Notes under the pieces: model-generated
Seen by the model: the letters and a program-made list of their open reading frames with translations, nothing else
The model's database searches: none
What the model was told of the DNA's origin: nothing
Virus record (IMG/VR): IMGVR_UViG_3300034072_002211
Span: 186,001 to 250,000 of that record
Length of the DNA: 64,000 nucleotides
Strand: one strand, 5' to 3'
Position numbers and translations under genes: made by a program
In this document: positions 59,295 to 62,450 of the stretch, piece after piece
Layout of the letters: each line of letters opens with the position of its first letter
How positions within the stretch are numbered: the first letter of the stretch is position 1

Positions 59295-60827
59295 TCATGC
59301 GGCGTAACTGACCTGCCCTTCCCAGTTGCCAACATACTTGTTACCAACCCGCTTCTTGCTGGTCTCGTAAACTGCCAGGACGTCCGGAAGGATGCTGTAG
59401 AGGACATTGATCTGTCCGTCCTGGAAGATCTGCTTACCCGTCTGCCGGTTGACCATTGCGTGAAGGCTGGGGTTGTCAATGGCCATGCGAATCTTGGGAG
59501 CCATGACCTCGAACTCCTTAGCGCCCATCCCGAACCATTCAAAGACCATAGTGGAGATCGTAGCGTTGACCATCACGCCGTGGCCCTTACGGCAAAGTGG
59601 GCAGGTGCTGTTCTGCTTGATGTTGTAAACGTGACCGCAAGGATCGGAGCAGCGAGTCCAGACGTTGTCCTGCTTTGCGTAGGTCTTTGCGCTGATCTCA
59701 CGGTCCTCGCCCTCGAGGACCAAGCCCTTGGCCGCGCGGGGCCACTCGATGGCTTCCACGTAGCCATGCTCCTTGAGGTTGCCCTCGAAGTCGTAGATAA
59801 AGCCTTCGGGCTTGCCCTCACACTTGCGAAGCACTCGGCCGCACATTTGCTGGTAGAACGCAATGTTGCCGACCTTGCGAGTGAGGAAGCAGAACTTGGC
59901 CAGCTTCTCGTCAAAGCCCTCGCAAAGAGCGTCAACGCTGATCAGCACCTCAGTCTCGCCCCGGTGGAAGCGCGCGAAGATTTCCTCACGGACCTTAGCA
60001 GCCTGACGGGGCACATAGTCGACATCACCAACCACACCCTTGCCTGCCGTGACCACCTCGCACTTGATGCCCTCACCCAGGAACTGCGCTTCCAGCATCT
60101 TGCTATGGTTGGTGTCGTCGGTGAAAACAATCGTGCGCTTGTTGGAATGACCAGCAGTGGCGAGCAGCCAGGTCTTCGCCACGTGGGCACCGGGGGTTTC
60201 AAAGTAGCGGGGACGGGCAAGATCACCGCGCGCGATCAGCTCGCTCATTGTGGCCGCGATCACAATGCGATCACCATACCATTCCTCGAGGCTCTCACCC
60301 GGATCGTTCTTCTCACGGTAAGGAGTTGCGGTGAAGCCGACCACCTTTGCGTTGGGCCAGTTCTTGCGAATCTTCTGGAACTCAGCAGCCGTTGCCTTGT
60401 GGGCTTCGTCGAAGAGGATCATTGTGGGAACAAACGAGGGGTCAAAATAGAGATCGTTCGTGACGTTGATGTCCAGGGTGTTGGTCATCGTCTTGGGGAG
60501 AGTCACAAGCAGGTTGCGCTTATAATCACACACAAGCGGATGGCTTTCTGCGCCAACGAGGTAGCTCTCAATTTTGTCGTGGAGGGCGGAGGTCTCAACT
60601 CCAAAGCCATGCTCCATGGTTGCGACCGTCTGGCCCAGGAGGACCTGAAGGTTCACAATAACCAGCACCCGGCCGCCGCGCTGAATTTCCTCATGCGCGA
60701 CATCGCCCATGACCACAGTCTTGCCATAGCCCGTTGGAGCCACCACCAGAGCAGACGGATTTTTCTCTAGCAAGCTAAACACTTGCTTAGTTACGTTGCG
60801 CTGTTCCTCGCGGGGCTTGATTCGCAT
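59295..60827 (-). CDS. SF2 DEAH helicase (RadD/ResIII-like) with C-terminal Zn finger
   Basis: APTGYGKT, DEAH, TATP, EGFD, QMCGRVLR, C..PC..C..C. Confidence 0.9.
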   Translation of the reverse strand: MRIKPREEQRNVTKQVFSLLEKNPSALVVAPTGYGKTVVMGDVAHEEIQRGGRVLVIVNLQVLLGQTVATMEHGFGVETSALHDKIESYLVGAESHPLVCDYKRNLLVTLPKTMTNTLDINVTNDLYFDPSFVPTMILFDEAHKATAAEFQKIRKNWPNAKVVGFTATPYREKNDPGESLEEWYGDRIVIAATMSELIARGDLARPRYFETPGAHVAKTWLLATAGHSNKRTIVFTDDTNHSKMLEAQFLGEGIKCEVVTAGKGVVGDVDYVPRQAAKVREEIFARFHRGETEVLISVDALCEGFDEKLAKFCFLTRKVGNIAFYQQMCGRVLRKCEGKPEGFIYDFEGNLKEHGYVEAIEWPRAAKGLVLEGEDREISAKTYAKQDNVWTRCSDPCGHVYNIKQNSTCPLCRKGHGVMVNATISTMVFEWFGMGAKEFEVMAPKIRMAIDNPSLHAMVNRQTGKQIFQDGQINVLYSILPDVLAVYETSKKRVGNKYVGNWEGQVSYAA

Positions 60828-60911
60828 TTGTTGACTCCGGTTATATCCGATCTCTTGCCACCTGTATAAAGAGGTGAGGCAAGCGAGTCAACTCTGGTTT
60901 TCACCTTTTTT

Positions 60912-61196
60912 TGCTCGATCTAGATTCACCGGTGACTCTATCCCAGCCGAGCCACACCATCCTCCACGAGATCCCGAACCAACCGGGGTACCGCTTCATC
61001 GGACCTCACCGCGCCAGACTACTTTGCTTGGGTCTCGAGCCCCGCCCGTTTCATCTCAGTGAATCGATCTCTGCTGGAGGGGGTCCTCATTCCCTCACCG
61101 AACGGAAGCACCCATGAAAGCAGGATAGGCCGTAGCTAAAGCCGCCGTTCAAAGCACCAAGAACCTGCGGGCTTTCCCCACCTGTTCCTCAGCAGT
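60912..61196 (-). ncRNA. candidate structured ncRNA (~285 nt)
   Basis: promoter TTGACA-N17-TTAACA (61233-61205); long-range helices; GAAA tetraloop. Confidence 0.55.
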
Positions 61197-61248
61197 TATG
61201 GTGATGTTAAGGTGAAACTGCGGTGCTTGTCAAGCTGCCAAACAGAAA

Positions 61249-61694
61249 AGTTTTGGGTTGCAAGACCGGTTTCCCCTCAATCCCGGCACCGCCCCGTCCC
61301 AGGGCCTCACTGATGCGTCCTTGTTGTCGGGCTCAGGCTTTGTCATCATCCCATTTGGCCTAACACGGAAAGCCCTAAGGCTATACCGATGCCGCTGGGC
61401 GTCTTCCTTCCATCTCGCCAGACCACTCATTAGAAAAACACCTGAGCAGTCCCAACGGGGTACGATCCCGTTGCACAACTTGCAACCCAAAACTCCCGAT
61501 TCAATGTCTGGCGTCCACACTACCAGCACCGGCTTGACAGGGCTATTCAAGAACCCCTGGGGACTCCATCCCCTTGCCTAAAGCACCATAGGTGAGCACA
61601 CACTCAACAGGGAATTGAACCCCGCGCCGCTTGAGGATCTGCTTCCACGTCCGGCCGGACCGCTTCCACAGGGCCACGGCCCCATCATCGAATC
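61249..61694 (-). ncRNA. candidate structured ncRNA (~450 nt)
   Basis: promoter TTGACT-N17-TAGAAA (61729-61701); perfect 16-bp inverted repeat 61249-61264/61479-61494; T-arm-like hairpin near 61601-61635. Confidence 0.55.
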
Positions 61695-61725
61695 GTCCTC
61701 TTTCTAAAAGAAAGCCGCGTTCAAG

Positions 61726-61758
61726 TCAAGAAGGGTGGCTAGAAGCCACCCTTCTTGA
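61726..61758 (-). terminator. hairpin terminator overlapping the next -35 box
   Basis: TCAAGAAGGGTGGC/GCCACCCTTCTTGA 14-bp stem. Confidence 0.75.
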
Positions 61759-61760
61759 TA

Positions 61761-62357
61761 TCAGCCGACCTTGACGGTGAGCTGGGCTTCGAGGTAAATC
61801 TTCTCGCTATGGCCGAGCGAGACGCCATCGGAACCACCGCCCTTGGACGTGCTCTCCAGCATCATTGCGGATGCTGCATAGCTGGCACCACGCGCGTTGC
61901 TCATGATGTCGCGAGCGATTGCCTCACCGAACTCGATGCGCGTCACAGTGCCGCTCAGCTTCTCGGCTTCGGCCTTGGCCTTCTCGATGAGTGCAACACG
62001 GAGATCGCTCTCGGCCTTGCGCTTCTCATGGAGCGGGATGCTGGCGTCGATGTTGTTGATTGCGATGGTCAGCTTGCCCTGCTCGCTCAGCTGGTCGCAC
62101 TTCAGTGCCAGCTGGTCGTTCTGCGTGGCGTCGATGCGGGTCGAAGCCTGAACACGGAACGTGAAGCCATCGGGCTGGTAGGTGAAGTTGCTGAAAGCCC
62201 AGCTGACTTCCGGGAAGAGCTTCTTGGCCAGTTCGAGGGCCGCAGCTTCGAGGGCCGGACGATCCTGGCCATTGACGACGCCCTGGATCCAGGCGCTGAT
62301 CTTCACGGTGGTATTGGTGATCGTGACCTCGTCGGTCATGTTGAATTTGATCTTCAT
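61761..62357 (-). CDS. SIMPL (DUF541)-like protein
   Basis: LRVALIEKAKAEAEKL...I.F.E...A..M.....L..V. Confidence 0.6.
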   Translation of the reverse strand: MKIKFNMTDEVTITNTTVKISAWIQGVVNGQDRPALEAAALELAKKLFPEVSWAFSNFTYQPDGFTFRVQASTRIDATQNDQLALKCDQLSEQGKLTIAINNIDASIPLHEKRKAESDLRVALIEKAKAEAEKLSGTVTRIEFGEAIARDIMSNARGASYAASAMMLESTSKGGGSDGVSLGHSEKIYLEAQLTVKVG

Positions 62358-62450
62358 GGATTGCTCCCGCGCGTGATTGCGACTTCGTCTATGCGCGAGC
62401 TCATGCCGAAAAGTCAAGGAAATGGCGGCGTTTCCGCCGCCATTACCGTC

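What the first reader, a model, noticed from the sequence alone, without database searches (positions are those of the whole stretch)
60912..61233. Second candidate structured RNA upstream of the helicase
Seen in sequence: promoter TTGACA-N17-TTAACA (61233-61205). A 5' domain is closed by CTGCTG-AGG/CCT-CAGCAG (61195-61187 with 61080-61071) and contains GAACGG/CCGTTC and a GAAA tetraloop. A 3' domain is closed by GATTCAC/GTGAATC (61065-61059 with 60929-60923). No credible ORF. The helicase has its own promoter at about 60865-60895, so this is not just its leader.
Basis: partly seen in the sequence, partly recalled or inferred. Interest (0 to 1): 0.62.

Follow-up and report, generated by a model that had tools for sequence, protein, structure and literature searches.

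The report
Conserved structured RNA before phage helicase
The stretch holds a real non-coding RNA element with its own promoter and a kink-turn-like fold, kept just upstream of a helicase gene in a clade of about 465-kb phages and absent from the RNA family library, but only its 3' half is conserved and its function is unknown.

Summary
The window is part of a huge-phage record (277 kb held; the same phage also exists as a 468-kb contig).

Folding energy alone does not beat shuffled sequence: z = +0.56 for the whole stretch, -0.9 for the 5' domain and -0.6 for the 3' domain.

Comparison with relatives decides the matter. It sits directly upstream of the helicase promoter in five further sequences from about three other lineages.
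- A covariance model built from the window alone finds three of them. A second round finds two more.
- 96% of pair cells are paired, against 64% in shuffles.
- 19 of 27 pairs show changes on both sides.
- One arm carries an invariant kink-turn signature.

The upstream promoter (TTGACA-N18-TAACAT, 61233-61204) is conserved too. In four lineages its predicted start coincides with the first base of the closing helix.

No terminator separates the element from the helicase gene. A long regulated helicase leader is therefore at least as likely as a free-standing small RNA. No Rfam family matches. No RNA data exist.

The parts
61204..61233 (-). Upstream promoter P2: TTGACA (61233-61228), 18-nt spacer, TAACAT (61209-61204). 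The predicted start is near 61197.
   Evidence: Consensus scan gives 10 of 12 matches, the only site in 1.2 kb. A homologous TTGACA-N17/18-TAnnCn lies upstream of the RNA domain in all lineages. It does not fit the phage's main promoter class (rank 213 of 405 TTGAC sites), so it is a plain sigma-70-like site.
61066..61197 (-).
   Evidence: The helices are present in the MFE, but z = -0.93. The extension is absent from L004, L006, L007, L035 and L039. Only block-wise similarity to lineage B was found (CTGCTGA at the start, a GGTTCG-like hairpin, GAGGA), with a weak consensus fold.
60923..61065 (-). It holds a closing helix, a variable 5' arm, a kink-turn-like arm and a terminal hairpin.
   Evidence: Covariance models R1-R3 find the syntenic site in L006, L035, L004, L007 and L039. 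95.9% of cells are paired against 64.4% in shuffles (0 of 500), and 19 of 27 pairs change on both sides. It is a single copy in the record and in two complete relatives.
61059..61065 (-). Closing helix, 5' strand GATTCAC. It pairs with 60929-60923.
   Evidence: Own-lineage duplex energies are -8 to -15 kcal/mol, against about 0 to -7 for cross-lineage pairs. 6 of 7 pairs change on both sides.
60923..60929 (-). Closing helix, 3' strand GTGAATC.
60959..61004 (-). Kink-turn-like arm: C-stem GTCC (61004-61001), bulge GAT, GAA (60997-60995), variable hairpin (60994-60966), GGA (60965-60963), C-stem GGAT (60962-60959).
   Evidence: A strict pattern search finds this signature at -161 to -182 from the ATG in W, L004, L007 and L035, and only 10 times in 555 kb of the genome on both strands. 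GAA and TGGA are invariant in the 6-sequence alignment. The C-stem covaries: GUCC/GGAU, GUCU/GGAU, GAGG/CCUC, GCGG/CCGU.
60932..60955 (-). Terminal hairpin (7 bp, 10-nt loop), preceded by the conserved GGT and followed by a conserved ACC-like junction.
   Evidence: A hairpin is present in every lineage with different sequence. 5 of 7 pairs change on both sides and 100% of cells are paired.
60904..60922 (-). Conserved linker TAGATCGAGCAAAAAAAGG (GATC motif plus an A-rich stretch) between the RNA domain and the helicase promoter. It has no U-tract.
   Evidence: Alignments A1 and A6. The terminator scan finds nothing here.
60863..60891 (-). Proximal helicase promoter P1: TTGACT (60891-60886), 17 nt, TATACA (60868-60863). 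The -10 lies in the loop of hairpin 60883-60854.
   Evidence: TTGAC(T/G)CG is invariant in relatives. The hairpin around the -10 is present in all lineages. This architecture is common to the phage's many TTGAC-type promoter-like sites (130 listed), so it is a promoter feature and not special to this locus.
60828..60853 (-). Helicase 5' leader: AGATCGG (60853-60847) and SD GGAG (60838-60835). GAGTCAAC (60837-60830) can pair with GTTGACTC (60892-60885).
   Evidence: SD-to-upstream pairing is seen in most lineages with different sequences. The SD is less accessible in long than in short transcripts. The statistics are weak.
59295..60827 (-). Helicase gene (510 aa, superfamily 2; ResIII + Helicase_C; four conserved C-terminal cysteines).
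   Evidence: Pfam. Relatives at 56-71% identity lie on contigs of up to 468 kb. Alignment A3.

Best explanation
The finding is a transcribed, structured, non-coding RNA element of a huge phage.

A sigma-70-like promoter (P2, 61233-61204) starts an RNA on the minus strand. Its conserved core is the 143-nt domain 61065-60923. That domain has a closing helix, a variable arm, an arm with a kink-turn signature (4-bp stem, 3-nt bulge, GAA ... GGA) and a terminal hairpin. These are joined by conserved single-stranded CUGG, GGU and ACC.

In this phage, about 130 nt of lineage-specific sequence (61197-61066) lies between the start and the core.

No terminator follows, so the RNA most likely runs on through the helicase's own promoter (P1) into the helicase gene. 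That gives a second, long-leader mRNA form. In it, the conserved domain would act as a binding platform for a protein or small ligand, and the Shine-Dalgarno region can pair with the stretch around the -35 of P1. Transcripts that start at P1 lack that partner. Helicase synthesis would then depend on which promoter fires and on what binds the domain.

Shown: the promoter motifs, the conserved domain and its covariation, strict linkage to the helicase gene, single copy, and the absence of a terminator motif.

Inferred: transcription itself, read-through, formation of the kink, and any regulatory effect.
For: Structure
- A model built from the window alone ranks the syntenic sites of L006, L035 and L004 first in 85 kb (29.4, 23.7 and 23.6 bits; E 8e-6 to 3e-4).
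- The second-round model finds L007 and L039 (E 6e-5 and 5e-4).
- In the six-sequence alignment, 95.9% of cells are paired against 64.4% +/- 3.3 in shuffles (0 of 500). 43 cells change on both sides against 16.2 in shuffles. Slid controls give 35-44%.
- Independent MFE folds of five sequences give the same architecture.
- The closing helix pairs only within a lineage.
- By my tally, roughly 20 of 146 cells are G-U pairs. This favours RNA on the helicase strand.

Kink-turn signature
- It occurs at the same offset in four sequences, and about once per 55 kb elsewhere in the genome.

Promoter
-. In L004, L006, L007, L035 and L039 the predicted start falls on the first base of the closing helix.

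Linkage to the helicase
- The element is always directly upstream of the helicase promoter, although the DNA further upstream differs: a peptidase gene in L004 and L006, another RNA-like element in the window and L039, and a 96-aa gene in L007 and L035.
- It is single copy in two complete 462- and 465-kb genomes.

Read-through and SD masking
- No terminator-like site was found.
- The SD is paired with the -35 area in most MFE folds.
- SD unpaired probability is 0.01-0.41 in long transcripts against 0.33-0.64 in short ones.

Precedent
- T4 gene e and I-TevI: upstream-initiated transcripts mask the ribosome site, and a promoter inside the structure gives translatable mRNA (PMC3014915).
Against: - There is no RNA evidence at all. 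No listed run on record as RNA holds the stretch.
- Folding energy is not better than shuffles.
- Only six sequences from three to four lineages support the domain, and the alignment was fitted to the model.
- SD masking is statistically weak. Per-sequence p values run from 0.03 to 0.65, and shorter RNAs are expected to leave the SD freer in any case.
- A complete, conserved promoter (P1) lies between the domain and the gene. That is unusual for a cis-acting leader and fits an independent RNA gene. tRNA genes that appear to have their own TTGAC promoters lie within 30 kb.
- P2 does not resemble the phage's main promoter class.
- No L7Ae-type kink-turn binding protein is found in the 277 kb held.
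Confidence: 0.45

Rival explanations
1. It is an independent small RNA gene. P2 makes a discrete stable RNA whose 3' end is set by processing or by an unrecognised stop just after the closing helix (near 60920). This RNA acts in trans or as a partner of a protein, perhaps the helicase. The helicase is made only from P1.
For: - It has its own conserved promoter, with the start at the first base of the closing helix in four lineages. This matches discrete RNAs whose two ends pair.
- A full promoter for the helicase follows it.
- The neighbourhood is rich in RNA genes. A second RNA-like element lies directly upstream, with a strong fold (z = -2.6) and a U-tract. 21 tRNA genes lie within 30 kb, and some appear to follow their own TTGAC promoters.
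- The conserved unpaired junction nucleotides and a kink-turn signature suggest a protein-binding RNA.
Against: - No terminator motif follows the domain in any lineage. The tail is A-rich, not U-rich.
- The strict same-strand position next to one gene is more typical of cis elements.
- No RNA data exist.
Confidence: 0.3
2. For the 5' domain only (61197-61066): the helices listed by the reader are chance complementarity in a fast-evolving spacer or insertion between the promoter and the conserved domain, and have no structural role of their own.
For: - z = -0.93 against shuffles.
- The domain is absent from four lineages, where the start abuts the conserved domain.
Against: - Lineage B also has an extension of about 190 nt after the same promoter. 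It starts with the same CTGCTGA(A/G)G, and its own hairpins show compensatory changes among three sequences.
- The 5' part may therefore be a second, older module kept in two lineages.
Confidence: 0.5
3. It is a DNA-level element rather than an RNA, for example a replication origin or an operator array next to the helicase gene, with inverted repeats bound by proteins.
For: - It is next to a helicase gene.
- Conserved GATC-containing motifs and an A-rich stretch flank the promoter.
- Inverted repeats around the -10 are a genome-wide promoter feature that could be operators.
Against: - The helices keep pairing through G-U pairs, which would be A-C mismatches on the other strand.
- Helix sequences differ between lineages while unpaired junction bases are conserved. 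This is the signature of RNA, not of protein-binding palindromes.
- Cumulative GC skew shows no inflection near this site.
- No iterons or direct repeats were found.
Confidence: 0.07
4. It is a member of a described RNA family that scored below threshold, such as the drum RNA or a kink-turn-bearing riboswitch.
For: There is a weak full-length match of 60908-61004 to drum (RF02958). It shares a stem, a 6-nt GA-rich internal loop, a hairpin, GGA, a second hairpin and an A-rich tail (16.4 bits).
Against: - The score is far below drum's gathering score of 43, with E = 2.7.
- The match does not recur in any relative even at E <= 10.
- No family matches at gathering score in the whole window.
- Drum RNAs end in Rho-independent terminators (PMC5737381). 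None is present here.
Confidence: 0.03

Closest known systems
Phage T4 gene e (lysozyme), I-TevI and similar cases: a promoter inside an RNA structure that masks the ribosome site of upstream-initiated transcripts (PMC3014915)
   Same: Two tandem promoters serve one gene. The proximal promoter lies within sequence that, in the longer transcript, can pair with the Shine-Dalgarno region. The short transcript lacks the masking strand.
   Different: Here the masking helix has only weak statistical support. The long leader also carries a large conserved multi-helix domain about 95 nt upstream of the start codon, which the T4 cases lack. Both promoters look sigma-70-like, not early versus late. Nothing has been tested experimentally.
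Kink-turn (Kt-7 type) RNA motif, as found in ribosomal RNA, box C/D RNAs, and the SAM-I, lysine and T-box leaders (own knowledge of the consensus)
   Same: A canonical 4-bp stem, a 3-nt bulge, then G-A, A-G and A-G opposite G-G-A, leading into a second stem. This is invariant in six sequences, and the canonical stem covaries.
   Different: Only the sequence signature is shown. The kinked geometry and any binding protein are untested. No L7Ae-family gene is found in the 277 kb held. Lineage B lacks the 3' G-A in two of three sequences.
drum RNA motif (Rfam RF02958; Weinberg et al. 2017, PMC5737381)
   Same: A compact, highly structured RNA of unknown function with a GA-rich internal loop arm followed by a second hairpin. 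It shows a gene association rather than a typical riboswitch position.
   Different: The score is 16.4 bits against a threshold of 43, and it is not seen in relatives. Drum has a 3' Rho-independent terminator and this element has none. The taxa and associated genes differ.
Riboswitch or protein-binding 5' leader domains of bacterial and phage mRNAs
   Same: A multi-helix junction with conserved unpaired nucleotides and variable helices, on the sense strand upstream of one specific gene.
   Different: No recognisable expression platform (terminator or SD-sequestering hairpin) directly follows the closing helix. A whole promoter lies between the domain and the gene. No ligand or protein candidate is known.

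Membership tests
Kink-turn motif | Canonical stem, 3-nt bulge, tandem sheared G-A/A-G pairs, second stem (sequence signature) | tested here: met
   The pattern N4-N3-GAA-hairpin-GGA-N4' is found at equivalent offsets in W, L004, L007 and L035. GAA and TGGA are invariant in all six aligned sequences. The stem covaries.
Kink-turn motif | Sharply kinked three-dimensional geometry, or binding by an L7Ae-type protein | not testable with these tools
   No RNA 3D or binding assay is available. No PF01248 gene is found in the 277-kb record, which covers about 60% of the genome.
drum RNA (RF02958) | Score at or above Rfam's gathering score (43 bits) | tested here: not met
   16.4 bits, E = 2.7, in the window only. 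No match in six relatives' loci at E <= 10.
drum RNA (RF02958) | Rho-independent terminator at the 3' end (PMC5737381) | tested here: not met
   No terminator-like site follows the domain, and the tail is A-rich.
Any Rfam 15 family | Match at gathering score | tested here: not met
   There are 0 matches in the 64-kb window. Only chance-level matches appear at E <= 10.
Promoter-in-structure translational control (T4 gene e type) | Upstream-initiated transcript pairs the Shine-Dalgarno region with sequence 5' of the proximal start site | tested here: inconclusive
   The pairing is present in most MFE folds. Duplex energy against shuffles gives p = 0.03-0.65 per sequence. The SD is less accessible in long than in short transcripts in 10 of 10 cases, but that is expected to some degree from length alone.
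Promoter-in-structure translational control (T4 gene e type) | Both transcripts exist and differ in translation | not testable with these tools
   No RNA run holds the stretch.
Terminated small RNA gene | Own promoter | tested here: met
   TTGACA-N18-TAACAT, conserved in relatives with the start at the domain's first base.
Terminated small RNA gene | Intrinsic terminator or defined 3' end | tested here: not met
   No hairpin plus U-tract lies between 60923 and the helicase start codon. 3' processing cannot be tested.
Protein-coding gene or decayed pseudogene | Codon periodicity, conserved frame, or protein similarity | tested here: not met
   Codon-position GC is flat. tblastx finds no match. 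Domain lengths of 123-194 nt differ by non-multiples of three, and no frame is shared across all six sequences.

The most novel reading that the evidence does not exclude
The 120-145-nt core is a new class of phage RNA: a kink-turn-bearing junction RNA with its own promoter, kept as a single copy next to a superfamily-2 helicase gene in about 465-kb phages. It would work either as a sensor (a riboswitch-like or protein-titrating leader that sets helicase dosage) or as an RNA partner of the helicase itself.
Probability: 0.3. Interest if true: 0.7.

Novelty: new member of a known kind. Interest (0 to 1): 0.52.

Why it matters
Huge phages carry long non-coding stretches that are rarely examined. 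This one yields a covariation-supported RNA motif that is not in Rfam and is tied to a replication or repair helicase. It offers a concrete, testable case of RNA-based control, or of an RNA cofactor, in a phage group with no cultured member among these relatives. The practical reach is limited, because the motif is confined so far to one clade (six clear members and three divergent ones) and the host is unknown.

Tried and rejected
- Rfam at gathering score and at E <= 10, on the window and on relatives, gave nothing usable.
- ARAGORN at default settings found no tRNA or tmRNA in the window. Relaxed settings give only a tRNA-like call in the neighbouring element, not in the finding.
- blastn against the phage collection found no match.
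- blastn and tblastx against relatives' loci and the phage's own genome aligned only 60802-60923, so simple alignment misses the domain.
- An nhmmer profile of lineage B against the window found nothing.
- A pseudogene of the transglutaminase-like peptidase gene that fills this gap in L004 and L006 was rejected, because there is no protein-level similarity.
- MAFFT plus RNAalifold on unaligned hairpins mis-registered the helices. This was solved with a single-sequence covariance model and iteration.
- A pattern scan of viral contigs with the neighbour's T-arm found no match.
- Sequencing runs: no listed holder is on record as RNA. The four runs that were laid hold pieces only of 61326-61730, upstream of the finding.
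- An origin of replication was tested by GC skew, and no inflection was seen.
- Searches for L7Ae, Ro60/TROVE and RtcB genes in the record found none.
- The hairpin around the helicase -10 was first taken as locus-specific RNA structure. It then turned out to be a feature of the phage's many TTGAC-type promoter-like sites (130 listed), so it is not counted as evidence.
- Model R3 against phage Phosso (469 kb, nearest named relative of the helicase at 34% identity) found no match.

Full report
**Context.** The window is bases 186001-250000 of a 277-kb virus record. The same phage exists elsewhere as a 468-kb contig. Genes here run mainly on the minus strand. The helicase (59295-60827, minus; ResIII + Helicase_C) is preceded by 933 nt (60828-61760) with no codon periodicity, while both flanking genes show it clearly. 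The finding covers the half of this gap nearest the helicase.

**Observation.**
- The consensus scan reports one promoter-like site in 60700-61900: TTGACA-N18-TAACAT at 61233-61204, with 10 of 12 matches. Shuffles give 0.4 sites.
- The fold is no more stable than dinucleotide shuffles: z = +0.56 for 60905-61205, -0.93 for 61198-61066 and -0.64 for 61065-60923.
- Rfam gives nothing at gathering score in the window. At E <= 10 there is only a 16.4-bit match to drum.
- On the sequence alone, the case was therefore open.

**Relatives.** The helicase has twelve relatives at 56-71% identity, several on contigs of 462-468 kb. I fetched their loci. Plain blastn aligns only about 100 nt upstream of the start codon, window 60802-60923. 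The rest of the gap varies.
- L004 and L006 carry an opposite-strand transglutaminase-like peptidase gene there.
- L007, L035 and L008 have short gaps.
- Many assemblies break 300-700 nt upstream of the helicase.

**Promoters.** The proximal promoter (TTGACT 60891-86, TATACA 60868-63) is conserved in all relatives. Further upstream, every lineage has a second TTGACA-N17/18-TAnnCn site, at -181 to -406 from the start codon.

A scan of the whole record lists 130 TTGAC-type promoter-like sites. Many share a stereotyped form: A-rich stretch, CTGG, TTGAC, an inverted repeat around the -10, and AGGAGATCG before the start codon. The hairpin around the helicase -10 is therefore a general promoter feature, and I do not count it as evidence for a special RNA. 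The upstream promoter does not fit that class. Its support is its conservation across phages.

**The conserved domain.** Visual comparison of the alignments showed short shared blocks well upstream of the blastn match. A strict search for a kink-turn signature (4-bp stem, 3-nt bulge, GAA, closed hairpin, GGA, complementary 4 nt) hit W, L004, L007 and L035 at -161 to -182. It hit nowhere else in their 1.5-kb upstream regions, and only 10 times in both strands of the 277-kb record.

In each lineage the bases just after the terminal hairpin pair with bases about 120-140 nt upstream:
- AUCCGUUGG/CCAACGGAU in L004;
- UGCUAG/CUAGCA in L007;
- UUUGCUAG/CUAGCAAA in L035.

Own-lineage duplexes are -8 to -15 kcal/mol, and cross-lineage ones are about 0 to -7. 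Separate MFE folds of the five domains give the same layout.

**Covariance-model test.**
- A model built only from the window's 143 nt and this structure was run without filters over 85 kb of relatives' loci. It ranked the syntenic sites of L006, L035 and L004 first (29.4, 23.7 and 23.6 bits), and the next hit scored 12 bits.
- A model from these four sequences found L007 (29.4 bits) and L039 (25.6 bits).
- On the six-sequence alignment, 95.9% of pair cells are standard pairs, against 64.4% in shuffles (0 of 500). 19 of 27 pairs change on both sides. Sliding the partners gives 35-44%.
- The alignment is fitted to the model, which inflates pairing somewhat. The slide control, the independent folds and the mix-and-match test argue that the signal is real.
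- By my tally, roughly 20 cells are G-U pairs, which places the structure on the helicase-sense strand.
- GAA, UGGA, CUGG, GG(U/A)GU and ACC are conserved as unpaired or junction bases.
- The element is single copy in the record and in two complete relatives. It is absent from phage Phosso.
- Lineage B (L005, L009, L011) gives only partial weak matches (16.7 bits). It has its own roughly 240-nt RNA-like stretch with compensatory changes.

**The 5' domain.** In L004, L006, L007, L035 and L039 the predicted start of the upstream promoter falls on the first base of the closing helix. It shares a few blocks with lineage B (CTGCTGA(A/G)G at the start, a GGTTCG-type hairpin, GAGGA). This half is unproven.

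**Leader or separate RNA?** No terminator motif lies between the domain and the start codon. The tail is A-rich. The element keeps its place next to the helicase whatever lies upstream. In most folds the Shine-Dalgarno region pairs with the area of the proximal -35, using different sequences in different lineages. The statistics are modest: p = 0.03-0.65 per sequence. The greater SD accessibility in short transcripts is partly expected from length alone.

This resembles the T4 gene e and I-TevI arrangement (PMC3014915). On the other side, a full promoter sits between the domain and the gene, the start coincides with a closing helix, and RNA genes are common nearby. I rate the long regulated leader at about 0.45 and a free small RNA at about 0.3. 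That a conserved structured RNA domain exists at 61065-60923 I rate at about 0.85.

**Limits.**
- There are no RNA data. Of the four runs laid, each holds only a short piece of the neighbouring element at 61326-61730.
- Only six clear members exist, from three to four lineages.
- The host is unknown. The promoter consensus suggests an alphaproteobacterium, on my own knowledge of Caulobacter-type promoters, and this was not tested.

Noticed in passing
window 61240-61729 (minus strand): The other half of the gap looks like a separate RNA gene.
- A promoter-like TTGACT-N16-TTAGAA lies at 61729-61702.
- A tRNA-like module with a good T-arm lies at 61693-61601. ARAGORN calls it only at a relaxed threshold.
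- There are two large domains. The second is closed by a perfect 16-bp helix (61494-79 with 61264-49), followed by TTTTCTGTTT.
- The fold has z = -2.62, with 0 of 100 shuffles as stable.
- Pieces occur at about 90-96% identity in four other runs: 61577-61730 in two studies and 61326-61567 in two runs guessed to be RNA.
- A T-stem difference in those runs (CCCTG to CCTCG) keeps the pairing.
- A 34-nt block (61294-61261) recurs at the start of L039.
- No Rfam match was found.
   Followed up: partly
whole record; e.g. window 7199, 6782, 6548, 24367 (minus strand): The phage has a stereotyped promoter-leader unit in front of dozens of genes: A-rich stretch, CTGG, TTGAC(G/A), CACCAG, TTCTGCTA(A/G)AAC, CTGGTG and then AGGAGATCG(A/G) 2-5 nt before the start codon. 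The -10 lies in the loop of an inverted repeat. 130 TTGAC-type sites were listed, almost all on the coding strand.
   Followed up: partly
G000:C1:253145-277317 (just beyond the window end; loci L042, L043): There is a cluster of 21 tRNA genes on the minus strand. It includes a tRNA with anticodon CUA (amber-reading, labelled Pyl by ARAGORN) and a 96-nt tRNA-Ile(UAU). Several TTGAC promoter-like sites in this stretch run straight into tRNA-like sequence. The amber-reading tRNA raises the question of stop-codon read-through late in infection. The genes in the window read normally under the standard code.
   Followed up: no
L004 2435-3124 and L006 2433-3182 (opposite strand to the helicase): In two relatives the variable gap upstream of the helicase holds a 229-249-aa secreted transglutaminase-like cysteine peptidase gene (Peptidase_C93, weak match). 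The same family is flagged next to the helicase in a third contig. Contigs from at least six assemblies end 300-900 nt upstream of the helicase, which suggests a hypervariable or hard-to-assemble spot.
   Followed up: partly
window 60922-60904 and 60853-60847; the same places in all relatives: GATC-containing motifs (TAGATCGA ... AAAAAGATC upstream of the -35, AGATCGG downstream of the -10) bracket the helicase promoter in every lineage. A third copy lies at 61070 in the window. Their role (methylation, a regulator site or a processing site) is unknown.
   Followed up: no
window 61726-61758: A near-perfect 33-nt palindrome sits right after the 218-aa gene (61761-62417, minus). It is probably that gene's terminator hairpin, and it overlaps the -35 of the neighbouring RNA-like element.
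   Followed up: no
window 59295-60827 (helicase protein, alignment A3): The helicase has four invariant cysteines near the C-terminus (C393, C397, C409, C412) followed by an invariant histidine. This suggests a zinc-binding module after the helicase core. One source names a relative RadD.
   Followed up: no
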